From: Convolutriloba macropyga | Lineage: Eukaryota | Length of the DNA: 64,000 nt | Assembly: GCF_964194025.1 (NCBI RefSeq) | Contig: NC_134474.1 | Span: 36,952,001-37,016,000, forward strand | Direction: 5' to 3' | Part shown: positions 7,144 to 33,500 of the stretch, one piece after another | Layout of the letters: each line of letters starts with the position of its first letter | Position numbering within the stretch: position 1 is the first letter of the stretch | Position numbers and translations under genes: made by a program | The notes under the pieces: generated by a model | What the model saw: only the letters and a program-made list of their open reading frames with translations | What the model was told of the DNA's origin: nothing | Database searches by the model: none

Positions 7144-7501
7144 NNNNNNNNNNNNNNNNNNNNNNNNNNNNNNNNNNNNNNNNNNNNNNNNNNNNNNNNN
7201 NNNNNNNNNNNNNNNNNNNNNNNNNNNNNNNNNNNNNNNNNNNNNNNNNNNNNNNNNNNNNNNNNNNNNNNNNNNNNNNNNNNNNNNNNNNNNNNNNNNN
7301 NNNNNNNNNNNNNNNNNNNNNNNNNNNNNNNNNNNNNNNNNNNNNNNNNNNNNNNNNNNNNNNNNNNNNNNNNNNNNNNNNNNNNNNNNNNNNNNNNNNN
7401 NNNNNNNNNNNNNNNNNNNNNNNNNNNNNNNNNNNNNNNNNNNNNNNNNNNNNNNNNNNNNNNNNNNNNNNNNNNNNNNNNNNNNNNNNNNNNNNNNNNN
7501 N
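7144..7501. other. Assembly gap
   Basis: Run of N. Confidence 1.
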
Positions 7502-14860: not shown

Positions 14861-15759
14861 AGTAAAAGAACCCAGGTTGAGGTCCAGACCCAAATTGGTT
14901 TATGATCAGACCCTATCGAGCGCACACCCGTGTGTTCCCAGACCGAAATTACAGGGTCTGGACGGAAGTTCGAGCGCACTACGGTCTGGACGATGGTCTG
15001 GAGATGGTCTGATCCGAGGTTATTTTGGTCTGAAAAGTCTGATCATAGGCGGATTCAAGCGCACTTGGGTCTGATCAGAGGCGACTTCGAGCGCAATTGG
15101 GTCCTCTTCGAGCGCACTTGGGTCTGATCAGAAATGTTTTCGAACGCAATTGGGTCTGATCAAGGACAATTTCGAGCGCCTTATTTTTTAAATATTTTTT
15201 TGTTCTTTTTTACTGAGAGATGTTGGCTCTGCCAAGAGGCAACAATAAAGCAGCGTTCTGATCAGAGACTCATTTGATGTCCGATAGCTCTGATCAGAAA
15301 AAAAGGAGTCCAGCTAATAGTAAAGGCCGGACCCCTTCAGACGAAATTTTGATCAACTGGAGACCACGATGTTCCTTATGGAAAGCTTTCTAAACTCATC
15401 CATTTAGTCAGAAATATACACTAAACGGTACACGAAATAAAATTTGTTCTCAACAGTTGGGTTTCGTTTTCTTTAGCATTACTTTTATAATTGGTTTTTC
15501 CTTAGATGAATTAAATACCGCAAACATCAGTTTTTATGAAATGAATATAATTTAACAAAATTAAAAGATTTGATTATAAAAAATTTTCTCTGATCAGACT
15601 ATTTCGAGCGCACTTGAGTCTGATCATAAAGTCTTCGAGCTCACTTGAGTCTGATCATAATAGTCTGATTGAGGTCTGGGCAATGGTCTGAATTTGAGTC
15701 TGGACCATGGTCTGAAGATGGTCTGATCAGAACGCCTTCGGTCTGAAAAGTCTGATTAG
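14861..15759. mobile_element. Non-coding element rich in (ttcgagcgcacttgggtctgatca)-type repeats, truncated by the Polinton
   Basis: Begins exactly where homology with the 34.9-kb copy stops (ccctag|agtaaaag versus ccctag|cgtacaag). Carries many TCTGATCA/TTCGAGCGC motifs in two blocks. Confidence 0.7.
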
Positions 15760-15907
15760 AGTAGTAATAGGGCGAGCAAGGCTCCCCGGGGGGGGGTGTA
15801 GACCCCATGTATTAAGATAGGGCATAGGAGTAATTTTTGAGAGAGGGTCTACACTAATGTATTAAGATAGGGTATAGGCGGCGTACATGTATTAAGATTA
15901 GTAATAG

Positions 15908-15999
15908 CGGCCGCCACGTATTAAGATTAGCGGCCGCCACGTATTAAGATTAGCGGCCGCCACGTATTAAGATTAGCGGCCGCCACGTATTAAGATTAG
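15908..15999. repeat. 4 x 23-bp perfect tandem repeat CGGCCGCCACGTATTAAGATTAG
   Basis: Counted directly. Confidence 0.98.
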
Positions 16000-16269
16000 G
16001 AATATCCTCCGCAATGTATTAAGATTGGGGATAAATCTAGGGGTGTTCCAGGGGGTGAGTAGTAAGGTGGGAGCAGATCAGGGTGATTTTTCGGAGCCAC
16101 TTGTCACGTGATTTTAGAGGTCATTTAGGGATTAGCAGGGAATTATACATGCAACGCGCAGGGAATTGCACAGTCAGCGCGTACGTACAGGCGGGGAATT
16201 GTACAGGCAGCGCGCATTAACGGATATTTTCCCTCGTAGTAAACTTCATCATTTTTTGGTTTAACCACA

Positions 16270-16485
16270 GCAATGTATTAAGATTAGGTATAGCCGCCGC
16301 AATGTATTAAGATTAGGTATAGCCGCCGCAATGTATTAAGATTAGGTATAGCCGCCGCAATGTATTAAGATTAGGTATAGCCGCCGCAATGTATTAAGAT
16401 TAGGTATAGCCGCCGCAATGTATTAAGATTAGGTATAGCCGCCGCAATGTATTAAGATTAGGTATAGCCGCCGCAATGTATTAAG
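16270..16485. repeat. 7.4 x 29-bp perfect tandem repeat GCAATGTATTAAGATTAGGTATAGCCGCC
   Basis: Counted directly; shares the GTATTAAGATTAG core with the 23-mer. Confidence 0.98.
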
Positions 16486-16639
16486 GTCAGTTATATCCAC
16501 TAAAATTGAGAAAATTGAAAATTTTTAAAAGAATGAATTATGAAGGTACAAAAAGACAGACACAGTATTAATCAAGTACATTATAAGTAATTTTAAACAC
16601 AACAGAGAGCGCTCACAATACGAAAATTGATTCAATAAA

Positions 16640-19600
16640 TTACAAGTTCAGGGGTACAGTATGAATTCCATCAGATAACACTTTTCGTTTAGGATAAAAA
16701 TATGAGAGTCCTTTCTTTGTTTGTTCATAGGTAGCGGCGCAGTGGTTGATTGTCCGAAATCCTCTATTTGTAGATGTTAAATTGATTATTTCTTCCATCA
16801 CTCGCCGATATTTTTCCAATGGTCCATCTCCGGTCTCTTCCAATGTTCGTTTGTTCAGTCCTTTGCTGCTGAATTTGTACTTATCCGATTTGGCATCGTA
16901 GCAACAATATGTTTTGCTACAGAGACAAATCATTTCAGTACATCTAAATTCTTCGTTGAACAGACCTGGTTCACGCTTATCGTGCTTTTTATGTTTATCA
17001 CAACAAGTTCTAGGGAAGAAATTTTGTACAGCATCAGCTTTGAAAGAATCATCACAATTGTGTTCCCTCAGAGTTTCCCAATCTGCTTTTTTAGATGGAC
17101 GAATGCAATCGTACAAATTATCGTGCGCTAGAGCTAAGTATAAGGAGTCAGTGTCCACTTCTAACTCTTCGAACGTGTCGACATCGCAAAATTTATCAAA
17201 AAAATTGTAATAAAGCTCCAACATACGTAATTTTGCGTACTGAAGTATAAAAAAGCCGACTATTATCGGTTCACGGTGCTCAATTTTTGATTTTACAAGT
17301 TCAACTTCGTTTAGTTCTTTTGACACACTGTTAAGTCTCTTAAACAATTTCCCGTTGATAGCTTTGTGTGTCTTTTCATCGTTCAAGTATTTTGTCTCTG
17401 TATGTCTGCTTCTGTCCATGATTTGGTAACCATAGGAACTATTCCCTAACAATTTCATTGTTTCTGCAACAACGCTTGATTCAGGATTTTCATCTCCAAC
17501 TCTTCTAGCATCAACAACCGATTGGACAAAATTGTTGAAGCATTTTTTGGGTGTGTACTGAACGAAGCGATAAATTTTGGTGCATTTTAGCCCAAGACTA
17601 AGGTAAAAATTGAGTAATGGTGTTATGACTGTTCCATTCTCCAACTTGAAGCTTGAAATTAACATGCGTTGCGGTTGCTTGAGTAAATCGTTATCAATTG
17701 CATAATCCCTCATATAATCACCAATATCTGCTCGACTAACATTAAAGTTTTTAAAGATTGGTGGAAAGTTCGAGAACTTGTATTTCAACCCATCTGGAAC
17801 TTCGAGATCACACTGAACGTAACCAAATAGTTTATCTTCTCTTATCTTTGTAAGTAGAGATTCTTGAGTCAGAGGTAGCTTGAATGGGAAATTGTTTCTC
17901 ACGTGAATTTTTACAGATTCATCACCTTTGACAGTTTCCCACCAGTTACATTCCCATATCTCAACAACTTTATATCCTTTGTTTCGCAAATAGTCTCGTC
18001 TTAGTTCATCGTATTCCCGTTTCTTTAATCCTTTCTGAGTCTCTTCCTCTGACATGCTTGCTCTTGCTTCCTGACATGCACAAAAGTGAAAGTAACAACC
18101 CATTGCTTCAAAAATAGTTTTACAGTGAGCACAAAATCCGTCTACATTAAAACAATCAATCTTTTTCTGAGTTCCAGTTGTGTAGTAGCTTTCAATAGTG
18201 CAGTTAGGACGTTGAGATTGTAGGTACGACATAACCATGTTCTCAAATTTCCTCGATTTATTTTGTCTAGCTTTAAACTTCTGAGAGTCTGAATCAAACT
18301 CCCATCTAGTGTAAAGTCCAGTGGGCATTTCTTGACACATGGAGAAGGGGTAAAGTTGACTGGCGTCTATACCCACAATTGATTTGCAAATGTTTTCTGT
18401 GTTTCGAATGTAGGTTTGATCCACAATTGCTTTTCTAGTAAACACAATAGAGGGACCACCGGTCATATCTTCGCGTATTTTATCATGTAAATCTTTGTCT
18501 GCTTCAACGAAAGGATAGAATTTGCTATTAGTTGATTTGTGTAGACAAATATTTGCTAAATTAGGTAGTGTGCAACCCAGTTTTAACATATCAATCCCTT
18601 TGTTATGATAGAATTCCATCATTTTCTGCATCGCTTCTAGTGTCGGGACAACATCTTTGTTATTATACCACCTGACAAAGTCTTGAAAAGTTGTCATTTG
18701 TTCGTGCTCCCACACACTTTCCAGGTAATTGTAGTTGTCGAATCCCGAGGGGGGCACTACCTTCAACCTAAGTTTTTTCAGAGCCTCCTGTTGGGAAAGT
18801 CCACTATTCAACAATTTTGTGAAATCCGTAAATTCTTTTTCCAAGGGATTGTGATCTCTCAACTTACTAAAGAAACATTCGTAAGGGGGTAGGAAAGTTA
18901 CATCCAATTTGTTTGGTGAGTCGAACCATTCATAAGGGAAAAATCCTTTGGTCTCATTTGTCTTGTAAGCTTTGAGGAACGAATCTAGTGATGTTGCTCC
19001 ACCAAGAAAGTTTAGAATATCGAGAAACTGAACATCGCCAAATTTAAAGGATACAAAATGATTAGCTTTTTTAATAACCGTTGGTTGAATATCGCGCTCG
19101 TGAATGAGGTAGGGTAGTAAATAAGACTTGATAAGATTCAGATCATATTTCCCGCTGTTGAATCCAAATACAGGTAAAATGCTGACATAACGTTCAAAAT
19201 GTTGTTGTAGTTCGAGAAGTTGATTTTTCTGAATTTGGAGGAATTGAGTCGACATATCAATTTCTTCTTCTTCGATATATTGAAATTCAAACATTGGAGT
19301 ACTCTCATCTTTCCTTCCATTTAGCTTCTCGAAAATAGAACTTACTCTGTTTTTAATTGCATTTTCAATTGAGGAAAATTTTTGCAACATTTCTGCTTTA
19401 CTTCTGCTAGCTAATTCTTCTAATGCTTCAACAAAAGATACAATTAGTGTCTTGGGGTCTCTGTTGCAAAGGAAAATAGGTTCTTGTAATAAATTAGAGG
19501 AAATTGACACAGATATTGGTTCATGTTTTCCTATCCAAGTAGTTGTATTGGTATCTTTTAGTTCATTAGATGGAACGCAGATTGATTCGAAGTCAAATAC

Positions 19601-20989
19601 AGCCAAGTTTTTGAACAGTTTTTGTTCTTCCTCATATCCAATTCCAAAACCGTCAAATTTATCGAACAAAGTTTCTCTCAAAGTGTAAACACTCTTCGGA
19701 TAAATGTGCTGTATCCTATCTTTACAAGATTTCACGTGACGGTGGAAATTACCAGCACGCTTAATAAAGGTATCACAATTAGGACAGCGGAATCGTTTGA
19801 AAAACGTGTTGATATCATCAACATAGCAAATGTGGTTGTTGTAGCGCAGTAGATTAATGTTGTTCTCGTACATATCAATACTTCTTCTGGCAAGTTCACC
19901 TACAAAATCCCCGTCCTCAATGTCAATGTCATAAATGAAAATGTTGTGTTTTATAGCATTTTCAACAAACACAAGGTGATCCATTGACACTCCTCTAAAG
20001 TTAATTGCGTCATGACCAGACTCGTGGAGAAAGTCACTGAACAACTTAGCTGCGTTTGTTTCCAGCTCAGCTGATCCATACAAGTGAACAGCCACAGCTC
20101 TAAACAAGCAAAGGTAGTCCTTGTAGGTTTCTCCGTATACATTCGTAACAAGACAATTTACATCGCTTCTCCTCAACAACTGTTCAGGTATAACAGCATC
20201 TAAACATCCCATTGGGATATTGTTGAGAAGAGCACAGAAAACTGTTACATTCGTAGTTAGTGCATACCGCCATTTTGTGTTTGCCCTTTCTTGAGCACAA
20301 GTCTCAATCAAATTCAATTTCTCTACTCTATCCTGAAGTGAGACTAAGTCTCCCTTAGAACAAAGTAAATGAGACTTCTCAAAGAAGGTGTTGTTCTCAT
20401 GAGCATAAAAGTATCGGTATTCGTCTGTGTCAACATTTCGTAAAATAAATCCCAGGGATAAATTTATTTTTGCAGCACAGTTAAGCTTTTCAAACACTTC
20501 CTTCAGTTTTTCATTAATTTCGCTGGGATCAAGTCTCGACAATTTAAAATTGAATACTGTATGTCTCCCATTCTCCATCTCAGTATTGTCAAAGAAGTGT
20601 TGACAGGCACTAAGTTCCTGCTGTAACTGTTCGTTGTTCCTATCCAATTCTTCCGATTCTAGTACTTCTTTCAAGCTTTCGCTGGATTTGGTTCCAACTT
20701 TGGTCGATGTTCCGTGTTTCCGTCTCTTATGTTGTTGAAGAGAATAAAAACTTGGAAATTCCTCCAAGCATATAGTGCACACTGTACTAAGCTTCTTTTC
20801 TTGAGGAGCGTGATGCTTAGCAAGGTGGTAGTTCAAGTCCTCTTTCCTCTTTGTGTAGAAATGTGGACACTTGGGACATTTTAAAGTCCCACTATCACAC
20901 GATTTTTTGTGTCGAGCCATTTGCTGCTTGACAACCATTTTCTCGCACTTTGAGCATTTGACAGGTAGATTTCTATCAAGAGGAGGCAT
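16640..20989 (-). CDS. polB: Protein-primed DNA polymerase B (1449 aa from first ATG) with zinc fingers, OTU-like domain and inserted Vsr-like nuclease
   Basis: ExoI VFDFES, ExoII FNSGKYD, ExoIII YNNKDV; TGGPS; motif A DASQLYP, motif B KLLGNSSYG, motif C VDTDSL; SKTY and KG. The ORF-track start at 21007 is TTG; the first ATG is at 20989. Confidence 0.95.
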   Translation of the reverse strand: MPPLDRNLPVKCSKCEKMVVKQQMARHKKSCDSGTLKCPKCPHFYTKRKEDLNYHLAKHHAPQEKKLSTVCTICLEEFPSFYSLQQHKRRKHGTSTKVGTKSSESLKEVLESEELDRNNEQLQQELSACQHFFDNTEMENGRHTVFNFKLSRLDPSEINEKLKEVFEKLNCAAKINLSLGFILRNVDTDEYRYFYAHENNTFFEKSHLLCSKGDLVSLQDRVEKLNLIETCAQERANTKWRYALTTNVTVFCALLNNIPMGCLDAVIPEQLLRRSDVNCLVTNVYGETYKDYLCLFRAVAVHLYGSAELETNAAKLFSDFLHESGHDAINFRGVSMDHLVFVENAIKHNIFIYDIDIEDGDFVGELARRSIDMYENNINLLRYNNHICYVDDINTFFKRFRCPNCDTFIKRAGNFHRHVKSCKDRIQHIYPKSVYTLRETLFDKFDGFGIGYEEEQKLFKNLAVFDFESICVPSNELKDTNTTTWIGKHEPISVSISSNLLQEPIFLCNRDPKTLIVSFVEALEELASRSKAEMLQKFSSIENAIKNRVSSIFEKLNGRKDESTPMFEFQYIEEEEIDMSTQFLQIQKNQLLELQQHFERYVSILPVFGFNSGKYDLNLIKSYLLPYLIHERDIQPTVIKKANHFVSFKFGDVQFLDILNFLGGATSLDSFLKAYKTNETKGFFPYEWFDSPNKLDVTFLPPYECFFSKLRDHNPLEKEFTDFTKLLNSGLSQQEALKKLRLKVVPPSGFDNYNYLESVWEHEQMTTFQDFVRWYNNKDVVPTLEAMQKMMEFYHNKGIDMLKLGCTLPNLANICLHKSTNSKFYPFVEADKDLHDKIREDMTGGPSIVFTRKAIVDQTYIRNTENICKSIVGIDASQLYPFSMCQEMPTGLYTRWEFDSDSQKFKARQNKSRKFENMVMSYLQSQRPNCTIESYYTTGTQKKIDCFNVDGFCAHCKTIFEAMGCYFHFCACQEARASMSEEETQKGLKKREYDELRRDYLRNKGYKVVEIWECNWWETVKGDESVKIHVRNNFPFKLPLTQESLLTKIREDKLFGYVQCDLEVPDGLKYKFSNFPPIFKNFNVSRADIGDYMRDYAIDNDLLKQPQRMLISSFKLENGTVITPLLNFYLSLGLKCTKIYRFVQYTPKKCFNNFVQSVVDARRVGDENPESSVVAETMKLLGNSSYGYQIMDRSRHTETKYLNDEKTHKAINGKLFKRLNSVSKELNEVELVKSKIEHREPIIVGFFILQYAKLRMLELYYNFFDKFCDVDTFEELEVDTDSLYLALAHDNLYDCIRPSKKADWETLREHNCDDSFKADAVQNFFPRTCCDKHKKHDKREPGLFNEEFRCTEMICLCSKTYCCYDAKSDKYKFSSKGLNKRTLEETGDGPLEKYRRVMEEIINLTSTNRGFRTINHCAATYEQTKKGLSYFYPKRKVLSDGIHTVPLNL

Positions 20990-21447
20990 TGTATTGTTGT
21001 GATCCAAAATAAATTGAATAAATTTTAAGTAAATTGCCGAGCAACTGTATCTGATAATAAAGTGAGAATGAATACAATTTTTGGTTTTTTAGTTAGAATA
21101 ACTTTTATGACTAATTATTTCCATATAAGGAAATGACGAAATTTCTATTTTTAGTAACAATACGCAATACGAAAGTTCAAGAACTTCCTACGAAGCAGTC
21201 ACAGTGTTACATTATACATTGTATTTAAATCCAGAAAACATCAAAAATGTGTAACCTTATTCCTTGGAGGAAAATCGGAAATCTTAAGTTATATTTATTT
21301 GTCATATTGCTGATTTGTGTTACTTTTTTTACAAAACAATACTATTCATCCCAAAACAAAATCTATCTGTCAGATGTTTGATCACTTAGAGAATACAAAT
21401 ATTATTGTAAACAAACTAATTTTGTAATTTCATCGATAAAACACTAA

Positions 21448-21777
21448 ATGTGTTTTTACAATAATATTAAAACATTAGAGAAGAAAACTCCTACTTTAAT
21501 TGAAGATAACTTATATACAATTGACGTTAACGTGATTATATTACAAACTACAAACCAATCAAATTTTAGTATTAAGAAACTTGTTGTAAAAGTTAATGAT
21601 ATCGTTTTGCTTATCTCATTCTCTCTTTTAACATTTTTTTATTTTAATAGATTAATACGTGAAATTTTACTCATTTGTGAAACATGTCGATCAAAAACCA
21701 CTTACAAATATTGGAGAAGATTTACAAGAGAAAAGAAGGTATACCTGATTCATACAAAATTGACGAAATTGATGTAG
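21448..21777 (+). CDS. Small Polinton ORF, unknown function (hydrophobic stretch, CxxC)
   Basis: 109-aa ATG ORF divergent from polB, overlapping the next ORF. Confidence 0.35.
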   Translation: MCFYNNIKTLEKKTPTLIEDNLYTIDVNVIILQTTNQSNFSIKKLVVKVNDIVLLISFSLLTFFYFNRLIREILLICETCRSKTTYKYWRRFTREKKVYLIHTKLTKLM

Positions 21778-22271
21778 ATTCATACTTTTTTTACAATTTT
21801 TTGGACATTTTCACAAAATCCAACAGAATAATCCGATTTAGTAAAGGACTTGAGTATGCAACGTTCTCTATTAAAAAATTTGAATATGAGGAGTTTATTG
21901 CGAAACAGTCTTTTGATTTATCCTCAGAATTGCATGTAAGCAAATACGAATTGTTGTTCATTTTGAACTCCGTCCCCGATATATTGGAACAGTACAGAAA
22001 TATTTCACAAACAAACTTTGTTCCTCTCCCAGAACCAATAACAATAACTTCTTCACTACAGAGTGCTTTGTACTTCCATTATTACAACGACTACAATGCA
22101 GTGGGAGTACTGATCAGGTTCGGAATTCGTTTACCTAACGTATATATACAGAAATTTGATTCCAAAAATGGAACATTTTCCGAGATTGATCTGAAATTTG
22201 ACGAATTGGAAAAAATTTATCAAAGCTTGACTTTTTTGGTAAATTATGTCACTTCATTTCAACTTAAATAG
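21684..22271 (+). CDS. Polinton ORF, 195 aa, internally duplicated, possible tandem PC4/Pur-like fold
   Basis: Intact ORF in AT-rich DNA. Repeats IIRFS..ATFSIKKFE..SELHVSKYEL and LIRFG..NVYIQKFD..SEIDLKFDEL align with each other. Confidence 0.7.
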   Translation: MSIKNHLQILEKIYKRKEGIPDSYKIDEIDVDSYFFYNFLDIFTKSNRIIRFSKGLEYATFSIKKFEYEEFIAKQSFDLSSELHVSKYELLFILNSVPDILEQYRNISQTNFVPLPEPITITSSLQSALYFHYYNDYNAVGVLIRFGIRLPNVYIQKFDSKNGTFSEIDLKFDELEKIYQSLTFLVNYVTSFQLK

Positions 22272-22783
22272 ACCATTTTAGGTAAAAGCATAGTCGGAAA
22301 CCTGTATGTATCCTTCACTTCCTACCTTGTTAGAAAATTTTACCCAAATTTGGATTTGAATTTCAGTTCGTCCAGAAATATCAAGTTAAACGTCACTTTT
22401 TCTCATAAAACCTTCCATCTTTGGTTACTGTTGTCTGATTGGACAGAGGACACTATATATAGAGGTTGTTGATTTTGACATTATCATTTGATCCAACTTC
22501 TCTGAAAACATCATCACTACTTTCTCACATTATACTAACTACTCCTCAACATTTTATCCTGCTATCGAGCTCCAACATTCACTTTCTTTTTGTTTAAAAA
22601 TACTTACTTTAGTTCTAACTTTTGTTTAAATCTAATTTATATATCCTGTTCCCTTCCTAAAAAGGAAATTTGCTGCTTTATAACTTTCTCTCCACTGATT
22701 GCTTTTATCACGTTCTCGACAAGAATCTTTTCATCCATTCTCATCACTTTCTAACAAAAACCTCTTCTATCATTTATTCCAAA

Positions 22784-23512
22784 ATGGAGTTCACCGTTCA
22801 AAATAACAACCTTCTGTACTCATTTTCTTTTACTGAGGATATTGCTCGGATAGGAGTTCGAGATTTATCAAACGGACTGTATGAGTCTCTGATCACTTTA
22901 CCCATTACTGTGTGGCACATTATTGAGCACCAGCGACAACAGTTTGATACATATCATCAGGGACAGGTCCCAATCACAGAGAATCAACTCGGAACTCACG
23001 CGATGGGACACGAAGTTGCTGTTGTCAGTGGACACCACTATCCTCACGTTAATGGATCTGATTTTCCTGCCAACTATGTAGCTGGAAATATTCAGTACAC
23101 ATTTCCTTGGGAGGAAGGGCAAATTCCAAACAGTTGGTTCACTACACCGGATGTAGGTGAGGTATCAGGTCCGGAGGTGGAAAATAATCTTCTCCAAATA
23201 GCTTCAAGAGCTCATAGAAGAGAACATAGCGAGTTGAGTATTGATACTAGTACCACCACGTCATTTAACGATCTGGAAAACTTTGATCCAGCGCAGTACT
23301 ATGGATCTACTGACATGTCAACTACACCCTCGATGGCAACCCCATCGATTGAGGAAGGAAAAGCTCACAACCCTATCTTTTTGAGTGATGTACCTAATAC
23401 TCCAGTCACTGTTCAACCAACTCAACTACCTGGTAGAATTGAGCGACAAAGAGGTTTCGGTAATGAAATTCAGAACTTACCAGAATATGTTATTGAAACT
23501 CTTTTTGAATGA
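22784..23512 (+). CDS. Polinton ORF, 242 aa: PC4-like N-terminus plus acidic S/T/P-rich tail
   Basis: AAAATGG start context, TATA-like TTTATAA at about 22677 and AATAAA at about 23560. RIGVRD...ITLPITVWHII resembles the PC4 pattern VDIR...GI(S/T)L...W..L. Confidence 0.72.
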   Translation: MEFTVQNNNLLYSFSFTEDIARIGVRDLSNGLYESLITLPITVWHIIEHQRQQFDTYHQGQVPITENQLGTHAMGHEVAVVSGHHYPHVNGSDFPANYVAGNIQYTFPWEEGQIPNSWFTTPDVGEVSGPEVENNLLQIASRAHRREHSELSIDTSTTTSFNDLENFDPAQYYGSTDMSTTPSMATPSIEEGKAHNPIFLSDVPNTPVTVQPTQLPGRIERQRGFGNEIQNLPEYVIETLFE

Positions 23513-23699
23513 TTTCTATGTTCCATTTTGTAAACTATTTTGTATTTGTTCGTAAAAATAATAAAGTTTCTGAATACCTTTTGGGTGTTTCGTATTAAAT
23601 TTTTATTTTCAATTTTATAATTTTTTTATAGTTTTCCAGAATAAAAGATTAACACGAAAGGTTACTTGATAATTTAGGTACTTGGTTATTATTGAAAAT

Positions 23700-24085
23700 T
23701 TGTTTTTCGACAATTAAGAAAAATACCGAATTTAATTTTGATATTTAAGAAAATTGTCGAATTTATTTTCGACATTTAACAAAAAATGTCGAGAAAAAAT
23801 TCGATTTTTAAGAAAAAATTACTGTTACAAATCCGATTTTTAAGCTGCAAGAACAGATTCAAAACTTGTCATTTTAAAAATTATTATAATTTATGTTTTT
23901 TGCTTAAAATCATACCGTAAAACTAAGAAAAATGAGAAAAAATTGCACATTTTGCACGCACAGTTTGGTAACATTTTTGATTTTTAATGAAAAATCTGAG
24001 GTTCTATTTTTGACTTTTAACAAAAAATGTTGTGTGAAAATTCGACATTTAACAAACAAATCGACTTCAAATTTCGACTTTTAGA
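23700..24085. repeat. AT-rich intergenic degenerate repeats centred on TCGA (ttcgacatttaacaaa)
   Basis: Multiple tttcgaca/tgtcga/ttcgattt units between convergent ORFs. Confidence 0.7.
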
Positions 24086-24125
24086 ATATACACTAATAAT
24101 AAAACATTTTAGTACAAACACTTTA

Positions 24126-24530
24126 TTACTTTCTAACTTCAAAGTACAACATGGGGTTATCAATTATTCCATGACCATCTAGTAAACAATCAACAATTTT
24201 TATTAATTCACTCTCATACTTTGAGTTCTTAAGAGACTGAATTCGGTCGAAGAAGGATGATCTCAATGTTTGTGTGCTTGCATTTCTTTGCTCAGCTCTC
24301 AGTAGATGTCTCTTGAACTTTTTTCTACTCAATCTCTTCTTAGACACGCTGGGTAGTTTTTCAACAAATTTGTTTTCCGAATTATGTTGTACCGCTCTCT
24401 TCAATTGGGTGAAAACAAGTCCTGCTTCTTCGTTTGTGTGACCGAAAAACTGATGTTTATATAAGGTGTATAAGCAGTCCACTGTCTGATATTGAAAAGA
24501 TAAATCATCCAATTTTTTGGAGTAATTCAT
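24126..24530 (-). CDS. Polinton ORF, 134 aa, basic NLS-like tract
   Basis: ATG ORF with KKRLSRKKFKR; AATAAA on the minus strand at the stop. Confidence 0.65.
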   Translation of the reverse strand: MNYSKKLDDLSFQYQTVDCLYTLYKHQFFGHTNEEAGLVFTQLKRAVQHNSENKFVEKLPSVSKKRLSRKKFKRHLLRAEQRNASTQTLRSSFFDRIQSLKNSKYESELIKIVDCLLDGHGIIDNPMLYFEVRK

Positions 24531-24846
24531 TAATGGAAGATGAAATGAGAATTATGTGATAAGAACAATTTTTCAGAGGACAAAAAGTGTAATTGTGAGA
24601 CGCAACAGAGTATTCACTAGTAAGCAAGTAAGGTTTATAATCCTTAACTGATACGCAAATGAACAAGGCTTTCTCACAAAATTTTTTATAAAAGTCAGGT
24701 AAAACTTGACACATAACTGCTGCCATTCTGTAACCAAAGTGATTTTGGAGTGATTCTTTTAAACTACCGTATAAGGAAATAACGCAATTCAGTTCAAACA
24801 CAGCGAAAATTTCGTTTGAAAAATGACACAGTTCAAGAGACAGCAA
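24505..24846 (-). CDS. Polinton ORF or exon, Cys-containing, unknown function
   Basis: 113-codon open frame overlapping the previous ORF. It starts at TTG directly after a tttttctag acceptor-like site, so the true start is uncertain. Confidence 0.45.
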   Translation of the reverse strand: MLSLELCHFSNEIFAVFELNCVISLYGSLKESLQNHFGYRMAAVMCQVLPDFYKKFCEKALFICVSVKDYKPYLLTSEYSVASHNYTFCPLKNCSYHIILISSSINELLQKIG

Positions 24847-24891
24847 CTAGAAAAATCCGTTGTTTTACTTGTTCTAATTATTTCAAACACT

Positions 24892-25080
24892 ATTACTCGC
24901 TAATGCAACACAGACGTGCTAAACATCAAGATAAATATGCTGCTCTAGTTCAAATGTTTGCTCAACTTAAAATTTCTGACTAAGTTTCCTTATAAGGAAT
25001 TTTTGCAAAATGACGCAATTGAACTAGAGCAGCATATTTATCTTGATGTTTAGCACGTCTGTGTTGCATTAGCGAGTAAT
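24892..25080. repeat. Perfect 62-bp inverted repeat (24892-24953 / 25019-25080) ending at the gap
   Basis: Exact reverse complement with a 65-bp spacer. Confidence 0.97.
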
Positions 25081-25280
25081 NNNNNNNNNNNNNNNNNNNN
25101 NNNNNNNNNNNNNNNNNNNNNNNNNNNNNNNNNNNNNNNNNNNNNNNNNNNNNNNNNNNNNNNNNNNNNNNNNNNNNNNNNNNNNNNNNNNNNNNNNNNN
25201 NNNNNNNNNNNNNNNNNNNNNNNNNNNNNNNNNNNNNNNNNNNNNNNNNNNNNNNNNNNNNNNNNNNNNNNNNNNNNNNN
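25081..25280. other. Assembly gap (200 N)
   Basis: Run of N. Confidence 1.
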
Positions 25281-30550: not shown

Positions 30551-33500
30551 ATAGTAAAGTAAAGTTTATTTAACCGATTGTTGAAATAACAGCATTTTAT
30601 GATAAGCCCAATACAAATATGTCAGCCAAACAATATGTAACAAAAATGAATGAGCTATTTGGCTCTTCAAAGTTGATGGCCATAGAGATATAAAGTTCTT
30701 GGCTAATTTATAAATGAAATCATAGATCATAGAAAATAATTCAAACAAAGTATTTTCGTCTGGTATAAAAGTTTTAGCAAGCATTTTGAAAAAAAGCGAC
30801 GCTCAAATTAGAGCACAAATTTATATTGGGTGGTAGCAAGTCTGCGCTTTTTAAACAGTTGTATGCTTTTCGGAGCGTGTTTTCTAGTGACTTTTCCTTA
30901 GTGCGCGTCCTACTGTATTGAGAGCGTAATCTGTTCTTTGCGACGAGTATTATAGACAGGATCCAGACCAGAGCTTTCAGTGGGGATTTTTAGGGGCAAT
31001 TTGGATCTTAATAGTAGTAGAAGTTCTTTGAAAACTTCACAGAAACACAAATCGAAAAATGTTAACAAGTTGTCCTGCTCATAGATGTTACGAAGGGGAT
31101 CTATTTTTCGTTTGAAAAAGATAGCTCGAATTATCCTTCTATGGCAGTTTTCAAGATGCTGTAAGGCTATTTTTCAAGCACTTCCATATATCAGAAGACC
31201 ATAAGTTACAATTGATTTCGCATAGGAATGATAAAACGTCAAAATGTGTTTAATGTTGAAAAGGTTTAAAATTTTAAACTCGGTATAAAATGCCACAAAA
31301 TTTGTTCAATTTCTTCGTTATATACAATTTGTCTTCTTTGTACGTCAGCTTCGGGTCCAGATAAACTCCAAGGTACTTGCATTTGTGACCTGTAGCTATT
31401 TCTTAATCCTTAAATTTGAATATGCCGCTGACTTGCGATTTTTACCGGAATGAATTAATGTGCACTTTGAGTAGTTCACTGATAGTTTGTTCCATTTGAA
31501 CCAGTCAATCAAAGGGATCAGTTCTTGATTAAAAACATCGAATTCCTTGCCGGAACCCACTAGTGTTGTATCATCAGCAAAGAGACTAACTCTGCTTTGC
31601 TTAATTTGATTTGATAGGTCGTTGATATAAACGACAAACAAAAACGGGCCCAGGATTGAGCCCTCAGGAACACAAGTTTCAATTACTATTGTTCCAGTAC
31701 ATTTCCTTCGATGACAGAAATACTGAGCTCTATCGGACATGTAATTTATCAATATTTTTAGATTTGGCTCACGGAATCCGTATCTCTCTAGTTTTTCCAA
31801 GAAAATTTTATGATCCAGCGTATCAAAAGCTTTTGAAAGATCCAGAAAAATTGCATGCCCTTGCTGTCCACGCTCAATACCTTCTCTGATGTAATCAGTT
31901 ATTTTTGCTATAGCATGTGCACAGGCGCGGTGAGAACAGAATCTGAAATGTCGTTGGTTGAACAGGTTTTTAGTCACAAAAAATTAAACATCTTAATATA
32001 GAGAACATTTTCAAAAACTTTTGAGAAACAATTCAAAAGACTGATTGGTCTGTAATTTCGACAATTTAAGTAGTTTCCTTTTTTGTATACTTTAAGTAGT
32101 TTCCTTTTTTGTATAATGGTGAGATTTTTTTTCAATTTTGAGGCATTATGGAGAAAAATTTTCTCAAAGAATTTGTTAATAGCTAAAGCAAAATACGGTT
32201 CAAGGAATGGCGAGCAACATATGAAACTTTCATTACAAATGCCATCGTTACCAAAACTTTTTTTGTGTTTCATGTGGGATAAAATATTTGCTATCTCATC
32301 ACAATTTGTTGGGAAAAGAGGCATCGACCCAACAATTTTTTCCACTGAAAACGTTTCAGACGCTTGCTGTATCCTATCCGATACCGTTCTACCAATTTTC
32401 GCAAAACAATCATTCACTTTGTCTTTTTTTGGAGTTTTGTGATTGACCATATCATAATTAGTTATAGAGCGGAAAATTTGAAAAAGTTCCCGACGACATG
32501 GATTGGTTCCTATTTTTTCATATTCTCTATTTTTATCTGCGTGCGGATTTTTTGTGTTACATCATTCCTTGAACGCTGATATCAAAGTTTGTTTTTATCG
32601 GTCGGAGAATTCAGCCATAAATGAAGAAATTTGTTCCTTTTATTGATCGCGTTCTTCATATTGTTTGTTATCCAAATGCCTTTTCTTTAACAATTGACTT
32701 CACGCAAAGGTGCAAACTTTTGAATTGTATCCATTATTGATTTCAATATTTCAATGTAAATATCTAAATATCTTCGGCAGTGACGTTATCAAGATCAGTT
32801 TTTCGCAGACTTTGGTCCCGCACGAACAAAAATTTAAGACTGTTTTCACCCTTTAGCTTTGAAATGTCTCGCTGCCAATTTGGTTCTTCCTTGATAACTA
32901 GCTTTTTGGTATTGCTGGTGAACACCCCCTGAATTGCAAAATGATCACTCTTAGTTGTTGTGATAGTTTCAGTTGCTATATATTTTCCCATGGTTGATGG
33001 CGTGACTCTAGTCGGTTCGCAATTTTGCACTTGGAAATCAAATGTTTGAAATGATTTGAGATATTGTTCAGTTTCATAACATTGCTTAGGTATATCAATA
33101 TTCACATCAACAAGTATAATGGTCTCGCCGTTTAAATTGTTTAAAAACAGCAACAAGTTCTCAAAGGCATCCAGAAATTTTGTCAACCGGGAATTTGGTG
33201 GTCTGCAAATCAGGCAAAAACGTTTCTTGTTTCCGTCAATGCCAATTTCGATTATCAAATTTTCAATTCGATGGTATTCGATTGTTTAATTGTTATGTGT
33301 AGGAGATCGTTTCTTACATAGAAGCCAATTCCACCAGCTCTTCGCGAGTCATTGAGGGATTTAGAAATGATTGGGTGATATCCTTCGAAGTGATATATTA
33401 CTACCGGATCTTCCTCTGCCAGCCAGGTTTCCGTAAGGCCTATCAGATCCAGCTTTGTACCAAAATCGTCTACAAAGGTTACCAATTCGTCAAAACGACA

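What the first reader, a model, noticed from the sequence alone, without database searches (positions are those of the whole stretch)
15760..25080. Intact-looking Polinton/adintovirus arm: candidate replication module of zinc-finger pPolB, iterated terminal sites and PC4-like proteins
Seen: AGTAGT end, perfect subterminal arrays, a 4.35-kb stop-free polB and compact accessory ORFs, while all neighbouring elements are decayed, so the insertion looks young. Known: Polintons have AG(T)-type termini, 6-bp TSDs and protein-primed replication. Inference: the repeats act as origin iterons, the polB zinc fingers read them, the OTU-like domain matures the polyprotein, and PC4-like proteins coat displaced ssDNA. 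This accessory gene set does not match the canonical Polinton core I can recognise and may mark a distinct lineage.
Basis: partly seen in the sequence, partly recalled or inferred. Interest (0 to 1): 0.88.

Follow-up and report, generated by a model that had tools for sequence, protein, structure and literature searches.

The report
One arm of an endogenous Polinton
The region is the left end and replication genes of an integrated Polinton/Maverick virus-like element of a published type, well preserved but cut off by an assembly gap, so it is a good new example, not a new kind of element.

Summary
An element terminus (AGTAGTA...) sits at 15760. It is followed by two perfect tandem arrays and 16 same-strand copies of a 12-nt core. 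Next come an unbroken 4.37-kb protein-primed DNA polymerase B (pPolB) ORF and three small genes, up to the N gap at 25081. Full-length relatives from public assemblies are colinear with this arm. They carry 0.8-kb terminal inverted repeats (TIRs) with the same ends and core arrays, 6-bp target-site duplications, an rve integrase, an A32-type ATPase and a weak adenain-like gene. It is therefore a Polinton/Maverick of the published (AGT)2 end type.

The polymerase has three N-terminal C2H2-type fingers, a terminal-protein-like domain, an OTU-like protease domain with conserved Asp/Cys/His, a fourth finger, and exonuclease and polymerase motifs. A Vsr-like endonuclease is inserted between polymerase motifs A and B. 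The terminal protein–OTU layout and the Vsr insert are both published.

'PC4-like' is not confirmed by sequence. One accessory protein models as a four-strand-plus-helix domain that best matches PUR repeats, only weakly.

The ideas that the arrays are origin iterons and that the fingers read them remain inference. They are helped by conservation of the core across diverged lineages.

No other element gene lies elsewhere in the window. This is a new member of a known kind.

The parts
15754..15759 (.). Host flank GATTAG, candidate half of a 6-bp target-site duplication
   Evidence: Two full-length relatives have perfect 6-bp duplications, CCAAGA and GATAAG. The second copy cannot be looked for here because the other end is absent from the window.
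15760..16487 (+). Terminal inverted repeat, left copy: (AGT)2 end, a G-run, then 16 same-strand copies of a 12-nt core. The inner limit cannot be fixed in the window; by analogy it lies about 790-840 nt from the end.
   Evidence: TIRs of relatives are about 790 bp at 95% and 837 bp at 99.5%, with 11-15 cores each. The end motif matches the published 5'-(AGT)2//(ACT)2-3' Maverick type (PMC8097293).
15905..15999 (+). Perfect 23-bp x 4.1 tandem array carrying the core
16270..16485 (+). Perfect 29-bp x 7.4 tandem array carrying the core
   Evidence: The 29-bp spacing is also the commonest in the L003, L004 and L006 copies.
16640..20989 (-). [quoted passage not shown]
   Evidence: One tblastn segment covers the full length of intact relatives, with no breaks. 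Exo I, Exo II, Pol A, B, C and KxY motifs are present. PF03175 is found in 5 of 24 relatives, best E 6.9e-19. dN is 0.077 against L003 with saturated dS.
20714..20956 (-). Three N-terminal C2H2/C2HC zinc fingers of the polymerase (ORF residues 18-98)
   Evidence: All Cys/His ligands are invariant in five lineages.
20222..20632 (-). Terminal-protein-like domain (D1), about residues 126-262
   Evidence: Structure model with Foldseek matches to Y-family polymerases, probabilities mostly 0.4-0.9 and 0.96 at best, E >= 0.019. This fits the published derivation of the terminal protein from the little-finger domain (PMC11161782). Weak.
19808..20155 (-). OTU-like cysteine protease domain (D2), about residues 285-400
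   Evidence: D297 and H392 are invariant and C300 nearly invariant in 25 sequences. Foldseek matches OTUD1, DUBA, viral OTUs and the TYMV protease at probability 0.96-1.00 but E 0.017-0.05. No Pfam or PDB sequence hit.
19724..19792 (-). Fourth zinc finger (C2HC), residues 406-428, between the OTU-like and exonuclease domains
   Evidence: Invariant C408, C411, H424, C428. Profile hit to a consensus C2H2 finger, E 4.7e-5.
17924..18121 (-). Vsr-like endonuclease insert between Pol motifs A and B (matched stretch, about residues 963-1028)
   Evidence: A five-sequence profile hits E. coli Vsr (1odg, 1vsr, 1cw0) at E 2.5e-4 to 3.5e-4. Pfam DUF559 and MTES_1575 match in 3 relatives each and MTES_1575 weakly here.
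21684..22271 (+). Accessory gene X, 195 aa, divergent from the polymerase gene, unbroken
   Evidence: 75 homologues; syntenic orthologue in L009 at 31% identity. No Pfam, PHROG or PDB sequence hit. Not modelled.
22784..23512 (+). Accessory gene Y, 242 aa from the family's conserved Met (the ORF starts at 22670), unbroken
   Evidence: 101 representatives in the 50% library. Model: strands 2-7, 10-16, 20-27, 32-40 and helix 41-61 at pLDDT about 90-96, with most of the rest below pLDDT 60. Best PDB matches are PUR-alpha repeat III: probability 0.89-0.97, target TM about 0.6, E 0.13-0.34. dN/dS is 0.10 against L008.
24126..24846 (-). Accessory gene Z, broken once (one frameshift, no in-frame stop seen within the two reading segments)
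   Evidence: Intact 197-aa and 199-aa orthologues in L009 and L008 match in two frames. No family hit.
25016..25080 (.). 65-nt inverted copy of 24892-24956 abutting the N gap. Colinearity with relatives ends here.
   Evidence: The repeat is absent from the same intergenic region of intact relatives. No element sequence follows the gap.

Best explanation
Window 15760-25080 is the left terminal inverted repeat plus the replication-side gene block of an integrated Polinton/Maverick (class Polintoviricetes) of the (AGT)2 end type. Intact relatives are about 18.3-18.5 kb long.

Shown:
- a true element end at 15760;
- a repeat-rich terminal region that relatives carry at both ends;
- an intact pPolB gene kept under purifying selection;
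- three conserved accessory genes, one of them frameshifted;
- relatives that carry the integrase, packaging ATPase, TIRs and 6-bp duplications.

The polymerase reads, from the N terminus: three zinc fingers, a terminal-protein-like domain, an OTU-like protease, a fourth finger, the exonuclease domain, then the polymerase domain with a Vsr-like insert.

Inferred mechanism, from what is established for protein-primed replicons and from PMC11161782:
1. The N-terminal domain primes DNA synthesis at the ends.
2. The tandem AGT at the very end allows the slide-back or jump-back step known from other protein-primed genomes.
3. The OTU-like domain frees the primer domain from the polymerase.
4. The rve integrase inserts the linear copy and makes the 6-bp duplication.

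Further inference, which I rate about 0.3: the 12-nt cores, spaced about 26-29 bp apart, are binding sites that mark the origin region. They would be read by an element protein, and the polymerase's own fingers are the obvious candidate.

This particular copy is either truncated or rearranged at about 25.0 kb, or its other half lies wholly in the unsized gap.
For: - End and arrays.
- Boundary shared by independent copies with unrelated flanks.
- TIRs and 6-bp duplications in two full copies from two lineages.
- Synteny of polymerase, X, Y and Z.
- Integrase.
- A32 ATPase: 24.9 bits against a cut-off of 22.8.
- Polymerase motifs and PF03175 in relatives.
- OTU-like and terminal-protein-like folds, with conserved Asp/Cys/His.
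- Vsr-like insert.
- Purifying selection.
- Core conserved in lineages whose polymerase genes are only 67% identical in DNA, while spacers differ.
- Published end motif, duplication size, domain layout and Vsr subgroup: PMC8097293, PMC11161782, bioRxiv 10.1101/2023.08.22.554363.
Against: - Only one end is in the window, and no integrase, ATPase or capsid-like gene lies anywhere in its 64 kb. Membership therefore rests on relatives.
- Capsid genes were not demonstrated even in relatives. The 442-aa and 270-aa proteins have no Pfam, PHROG or PDB sequence hit.
- The adenain-like hit is below its cut-off (E 0.0043).
- Fold matches for the OTU-like and terminal-protein-like domains have high probability but E >= 0.015.
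- Array copy number varies from 11 to 44 between copies, and units within an array are identical. That also fits neutral slippage.
- Finger sequences are no better conserved than the rest of the protein: by my count on the alignment, about 55-65% between lineages that share the core. This neither helps nor hurts the fingers-read-cores idea.
- No relative was found in IMG/VR viral contigs.
Confidence: 0.92

Rival explanations
1. The subterminal arrays are neutral minisatellites produced by slippage or unequal exchange inside the TIR, with no role in replication or integration.
For: Units within each array are 100% identical. Core number differs widely between close copies: 16, 24, 21 and 44. 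A deletion derivative has greatly expanded arrays.
Against: The same 12-nt core, always in one orientation and mostly 26-29 bp apart, is kept in both TIRs of lineages whose polymerase genes are only 67% identical in DNA, while the spacer columns differ.
Confidence: 0.3
2. The cores are bound by an element protein other than the polymerase fingers. Candidates are the integrase, in the way subterminal repeats of cut-and-paste transposons bind their transposase, or accessory protein Y through its PUR-like domain.
For: Y has a confident four-strand-plus-helix domain whose best PDB matches are PUR repeats. PUR proteins bind nucleic acids; that is from my own knowledge, not tested here. Y sits in the replication-side block and is under purifying selection. 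The relatives' integrases show precomputed hits to extra Pfam families besides rve; I did not look up what these are.
Against: The fold match is weak (E 0.13). Nothing links any protein to the cores. Three or four fingers on the protein that must find the ends remain the simplest candidate.
Confidence: 0.2
3. The locus is a solo, truncated or rearranged arm and not a full element interrupted by a gap. It would be a dead fragment whose polymerase gene merely has not yet decayed.
For: Colinearity with relatives stops at about 25.0 kb. A 65-nt inverted copy then abuts the gap, and intact relatives lack it. None of the remaining roughly 9 kb of genes appears in the 38.7 kb after the gap. Gene Z is frameshifted.
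Against: The gap is 200 N, a length I take (my assumption) to be a placeholder for an unknown size, so it could hide the rest. The foldback may be an assembly artefact. The contig of a second copy, 98.7% identical at another locus, also ends about 0.5 kb further on, which suggests a region that assembles badly.
Confidence: 0.5
4. It is a different pPolB replicon without integrase or capsid genes (linear-plasmid-like), or the scaffold is chimeric at 15760.
For: No integrase or capsid gene is in the window.
Against: Colinear relatives carry the integrase, ATPase, TIRs and 6-bp duplications. The 15760 boundary is shared by copies at other loci.
Confidence: 0.02

Closest known systems
Polintons/Mavericks with 5'-(AGT)2//(ACT)2-3' ends and 6-bp duplications (Kapitonov & Jurka 2006 as cited in PMC8097293; Barreat & Katzourakis 2021, PMC8097293)
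   Same: The end motif, the 6-bp duplications and TIR sizes in relatives (790-837 bp, within the published 46-1447 bp), the total size of about 18.4 kb, the polymerase plus rve integrase plus ATPase, and an accessory region next to the polymerase gene.
   Different: That work is on vertebrates. I found no mention there of conserved core arrays in the TIR or of fingers on the polymerase. Capsid genes were not shown here.
Vsr-bearing pPolB2 Polintons of molluscs and a marine nematode (Jeong et al., bioRxiv 10.1101/2023.08.22.554363)
   Same: The pPolB, which is integrase-linked in full relatives, has all Exo and Pol motifs and a Vsr endonuclease domain.
   Different: I could not place this protein in their tree, because no sequences were at hand. 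The host of the window is unknown. That paper does not discuss N-terminal fingers.
Polinton pPolB layout of terminal protein, viral OTU, exonuclease and polymerase (Krupovic et al. 2024, PMC11161782)
   Same: A Y-family-polymerase-like domain followed by an OTU-like domain with conserved Cys and His, ahead of the exonuclease domain. Endonuclease inserts in Polinton polymerases are also noted there.
   Different: Here three C2H2-type fingers precede the terminal-protein-like domain and a fourth follows the OTU-like domain. The word 'zinc' does not occur in that paper.
Adintoviruses (Starrett et al. 2021, PMC8502044)
   Same: An animal-type element with polymerase and integrase, and small genes upstream of the polymerase gene.
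   Different: The upstream genes here lack the LxCxE, CR1-like and paired CxxC motifs of the 'Oncoid' genes. Adenovirus-like virion proteins were not shown. No free-ended or viral-contig relative was found.
PC4/Whirly/PUR class of four-strand-plus-helix nucleic-acid-binding domains
   Same: Residues 1-61 of protein Y model confidently with that order of strands and helix, and best match PUR-alpha repeat III.
   Different: No sequence match to PC4 or PUR. PC4 itself is not among the top 50 fold matches, and the best E-value is 0.13. Protein X is unrelated to Y by profile comparison and was not modelled.

Membership tests
Polinton/Maverick | [quoted passage not shown] | tested here: met
   Exo I, Exo II, Pol A, B, C and KxY motifs in the window protein. 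PF03175 in 5 of 24 relatives, best E 6.9e-19. The window protein itself gives no PF03175 hit.
Polinton/Maverick | Linked retrovirus-like (rve) integrase | tested here: met
   Absent from the window. Present about 8 kb from the polymerase start in every colinear relative.
Polinton/Maverick | Terminal inverted repeats of hundreds of bp | tested here: met
   About 790 bp at 95% and 837 bp at 99.5% in two full relatives. The window holds one copy only.
Polinton/Maverick | 6-bp target-site duplication | tested here: met
   CCAAGA and GATAAG in two full relatives. Not testable for the window copy.
Polinton/Maverick | (AGT)2 or (AG)3 end motif | tested here: met
   AGTAGTA at 15760 and at eight ends of relatives. 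The motif is as published in PMC8097293.
Polinton/Maverick | FtsK/A32-type packaging ATPase | tested here: met
   The 291-aa protein of L008 hits Pox_A32 at 24.9 bits, cut-off 22.8. Not in the window.
Polinton/Maverick | Adenain/Ulp1-like cysteine protease | tested here: inconclusive
   The 132-aa protein of L008 hits Peptidase_C5 at E 0.0043, 17.2 bits, below the 21.3 cut-off.
Polinton/Maverick (virus-like reading) and Adintoviridae | [quoted passage not shown] | tested here: inconclusive
   The conserved 442-aa and 270-aa proteins lie downstream of the integrase, ahead of the protease-like gene and the far TIR. They have no Pfam, PHROG or PDB sequence hit.
Vsr-bearing pPolB2 subgroup | Vsr endonuclease domain inside the polymerase | tested here: met
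   Profile hit to 1odg, 1vsr and 1cw0 at E 2.5e-4 to 3.5e-4. DUF559 and MTES_1575 in relatives.
Vsr-bearing pPolB2 subgroup | Placement inside the published pPolB2 clade | not testable with these tools
   No reference sequences of that clade were available.
Polinton polymerase with terminal protein and viral OTU | OTU fold with catalytic Cys and His | tested here: met
   D297 and H392 invariant, C300 nearly invariant. OTU structures match at probability 0.96-1.00, target TM 0.4-0.5, but E 0.017-0.05.
PC4 (PF02229) family | Sequence membership | tested here: not met
   No Pfam hit for X, Y or Z at E <= 0.1. No PDB sequence hit for the X and Y profiles.
PC4/Whirly/PUR fold class | Four antiparallel strands followed by a helix | tested here: inconclusive
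   Residues 1-61 of Y have that order at pLDDT about 90-96. The best matches are PUR repeat III: probability 0.89-0.97, E 0.13-0.34. X was not modelled.
Adintovirus 'Oncoid' genes | LxCxE, CR1-like and paired CxxC motifs in genes upstream of the polymerase gene | tested here: not met
   None found in X, Y or Z.

The most novel reading that the evidence does not exclude
In this Polinton lineage the priming polymerase may find its own origin. Three N-terminal C2H2-type fingers fused to the terminal-protein domain would read the 12-nt cores iterated about every 26-29 bp in both TIRs. From my own knowledge, other protein-primed replicons leave sequence-specific recognition of the end region to separate host or element proteins. 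A PUR-like accessory protein (Y) might help by binding or opening the DNA.
Probability: 0.25. Interest if true: 0.6.

Novelty: new member of a known kind. Interest (0 to 1): 0.3.

Why it matters
The copy gives a clean example of one Polinton end together with an intact polymerase gene. With its relatives, it points to two features I did not find in the papers I read. One is zinc fingers fused ahead of the terminal-protein domain. The other is a short core kept in the TIR arrays across diverged lineages. If the two are linked, they would bear on how Polintons recognise their replication origins, which I believe is still unknown. Otherwise the region is an ordinary, recently active endogenous element. 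It is useful for repeat annotation and for polymerase phylogenies.

Tried and rejected
- Pfam on the window proteins gave only weak finger and MTES_1575 hits. The polymerase sequence found nothing in the PDB.
- A profile of polymerase residues 101-480 found only zinc fingers in the PDB, not OTU. OTU therefore rests on the fold model and the conserved residues.
- Profiles of X and Y found nothing in the PDB. X and Y are unrelated by hhalign.
- The viral structure library gave only unnamed small proteins for Y.
- PHROGs gave nothing useful.
- Profiles of the 442-aa and 270-aa proteins of relatives found no capsid in the PDB.
- The IMG/VR scan with a polymerase alignment found no relative.
- Rfam and tRNA scans of the window were empty.
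- Host identification failed. No names or accessions come with the protein clusters, and no paper mentions the one NCBI assembly. A mollusc or other marine invertebrate host is only a guess from the Vsr-bearing polymerase type.
- I asked whether the fingers are better conserved than the rest of the protein between lineages that share the core. By my count on the alignment they are not (about 55-65% identity), so this is uninformative.
- I first took a tandem repeat near the start of L002 for a different iteron. On reading the sequence it looks like coding sequence ahead of the finger segment, so I dropped it.
- dS between polymerase lineages is saturated, so no dN/dS ratio could be given for the polymerase.

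Full report
**Observation**

The sequence at 15760 reads AGTAGTAATAG. That 22-nt end occurs once in the window. From 15807 to 16487 a 12-nt core occurs 16 times, always on the same strand, against 0.77 matches expected in the whole window from shuffles. Eleven of these copies sit in two perfect tandem arrays: 23 bp x 4.1 at 15905-15999 and 29 bp x 7.4 at 16270-16485. These are the two strongest tandem repeats in the whole window.

An ORF of 4368 nt runs on the minus strand from 21007 to 16640. The likely ATG is at 20989, where relatives start. Three further small genes follow, up to a 200-N gap at 25081-25280.

**Is 15760 a real end?**

Yes. A copy that is 98.7% identical over 8.8 kb (L004), a 79% copy (L003) and a 67% copy (L001) all lose similarity to the window at exactly this base. 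Each has an unrelated flank. A chimeric scaffold join at 15760 is excluded.

**What the whole element looks like**

Two full copies were read, each as two overlapping loci from one contig.
- In contig ctg16138 (L003 and L008) the ends lie 18,330 bp apart.
- In contig ctg83390 (L001 and L009) the ends lie 18,479 bp apart. Both lengths are computed.

Both copies end in AGTAGTA...TACTACT. Both are flanked by a perfect 6-bp duplication, CCAAGA and GATAAG. Their TIRs are about 790 bp at 95% identity and 837 bp at 99.5% identity, each with 11-15 cores in one orientation.

The gene order is the same in both lineages:
- the polymerase gene, pointing outward next to one TIR;
- a divergent block of small genes, of which X, Y and Z have counterparts in the window;
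- then about a dozen same-strand genes.

The same-strand genes include a 291-aa protein that passes the Pfam cut-off for Pox_A32 (24.9 against 22.8 bits) and an rve integrase. They also include conserved 270-aa, 118-aa and 442-aa proteins, and a 132-aa protein with a sub-threshold adenovirus-protease hit at E 0.0043.

This is the definition of a Polinton/Maverick. The (AGT)2//(ACT)2 end motif with 6-bp duplications is the commonest type described for Mavericks (PMC8097293). I could not show the capsid genes.

**The polymerase**

The protein carries Exo I, Exo II, Pol A, Pol B, Pol C and KxY motifs. Pfam PF03175 is not detected in the window protein. It is detected in 5 of 24 relatives, best E 6.9e-19.

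Three C2H2/C2HC fingers occupy residues 18-98. All their ligands are invariant in five lineages. In L002 the fingers lie upstream of the called start, separated by about 70 nt bounded by GT...AG.

I modelled residues 1-480 with a 25-sequence alignment (mean pLDDT 75.5). The Foldseek matches fall into three groups:
- OTU deubiquitinases and viral OTU proteases, at probability 0.96-1.00, target TM 0.4-0.5 and rmsd about 4-5 A;
- Y-family polymerases;
- C2H2 fingers.

All of these have E >= 0.015, because the query has several domains. D297 and H392 are invariant and C300 is nearly invariant in the alignment.

This matches the layout published for Polinton polymerases: a terminal-protein domain derived from the Y-family little finger, followed by a viral OTU domain. 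The OTU domain is proposed to cut the primer domain free (PMC11161782).

A fourth finger at residues 406-428 is invariant.

Between Pol A and Pol B there is an insert. A five-sequence profile of it hits E. coli Vsr at E 2.5e-4. Pfam DUF559 and MTES_1575 match it in relatives. A Vsr domain in the polymerase is the published hallmark of a pPolB2 subgroup in mollusc and marine-nematode Polintons (bioRxiv 10.1101/2023.08.22.554363). I could not place this protein in that tree.

**Accessory genes**

- X (195 aa) has 75 homologues and no family or PDB match.
- Y (242 aa) has 101 representatives in the 50% library. Its model has four strands and a long helix in residues 1-61 at pLDDT about 90-96, and most of the rest is poorly predicted. 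The best PDB matches are PUR-alpha repeat III at probability 0.89-0.97, target TM about 0.6 and E 0.13-0.34. PC4 is not among the top 50. The viral library gave nothing named.
- X and Y are unrelated by profile comparison.
- Z matches intact 197-aa and 199-aa orthologues in two frames, so it carries one frameshift.
- None of the three has the LxCxE, CR1-like or paired CxxC motifs of the adintovirus 'Oncoid' genes (PMC8502044).

'PC4-like' is therefore not a membership. At most it is a resemblance in the order of strands and helix, for one protein.

**State and age of the copy**

- The polymerase, X and Y genes have no breaks; Z has one.
- Between lineages the polymerase has dN 0.077 with saturated dS. 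Y has dN/dS 0.10. The lineages therefore diverged while functional.
- Protein clusters at 90% identity hold 306 and 354 members, many of them fragments in the samples listed. The family is thus abundant and mostly decayed, and this polymerase is one of the intact ones.
- At least two lineages, 79% identical in DNA, live in the same assembly.

**The right-hand side**

Colinearity with relatives ends at about 25.0 kb. Bases 25016-25080 are an inverted copy of 24892-24956 and abut the gap. Intact relatives have no such repeat there. Nothing after the gap, and nothing elsewhere in the window, encodes any other element gene or a second TIR.

The copy is either truncated or rearranged, or the rest is inside the unsized gap. 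The L004 contig also ends about 0.5 kb past this point.

**Mechanism**

Shown: the parts listed above.

Established for the family and inferred here: protein priming at the ends by the N-terminal domain. The tandem trinucleotide at the very end serves the slide-back or jump-back step known from other protein-primed genomes. The OTU-like domain releases the primer domain. The rve integrase inserts the copy and makes a 6-bp duplication.

New inference: the cores are functional sites. The evidence is that the same 12-nt core, in one orientation and mostly 26-29 bp apart, is kept in both TIRs of lineages whose polymerase genes are 67% identical in DNA. The spacer columns between cores are not kept. 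The columns just outside the 8-nt anchor I used are also near-invariant and agree between lineages.

Against this: units within an array are identical and copy number ranges from 11 to 44, as in a plain minisatellite.

Who reads the cores is open. The fingers on the polymerase are the simplest candidate. By my count on the alignment they are no better conserved than the rest of the protein, about 55-65% between lineages that share the core.

**Verdict**

This is a genuine, well-preserved arm of a Polinton/Maverick of a published type: a new member of a known kind. Its claim of a non-canonical gene set is not. Its mechanistic proposals are either already published (OTU) or still untested (iterons read by fingers, PC4-like single-strand coating).

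Noticed in passing
L007:1-15959 (ERZ25071359, ctg22686): A deletion derivative of the 79% lineage. The TIR arrays run straight into the first quarter of the polymerase gene, most of which is missing. The rest is colinear at 95-97%. Both TIRs carry much expanded arrays, at least 37 and 44 cores.
   Followed up: partly
L002:300-660 (GCA_013332675.1): In this more distant lineage the three fingers lie upstream of the called polymerase start, separated from it by about 70 nt bounded by GT...AG. This may be an intron in a Polinton gene. A 21-bp tandem repeat further upstream, at 113-216, looks like coding sequence.
   Followed up: partly
window 24892-25080: A 65-nt inverted duplication, 98% complementary, lies directly against the N gap. 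Intact relatives lack it. It is either a foldback rearrangement or an assembly artefact.
   Followed up: partly
window 15037-15726: The element is inserted next to a block of degenerate 24-53-bp tandem repeats rich in GTCTGATC. It may be the repeat region of another element.
   Followed up: no
window 31396-33258, minus strand: Several adjacent ORFs, one with a clear reverse-transcriptase domain (RVT_1, E 2.3e-24), suggest a fragmented retrotransposon.
   Followed up: partly
window 7144-7501: A second N run, 358 bases long.
   Followed up: no
window 15781-15800 and the matching positions in L001, L003 and L004: A run of C then G (8 to about 18 G), some 25-40 nt from the terminus, is kept in all lineages just before the first core.
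   Followed up: no
window 16135-16215: Between the two core arrays there are three copies of a different, roughly 23-nt GC-rich unit, together with a CACGTG palindrome nearby at about 16105.
   Followed up: no
L004:4578-8799: The 98.7% identical sister copy has its polymerase gene split into three called ORFs, whereas the window copy is unbroken.
   Followed up: no
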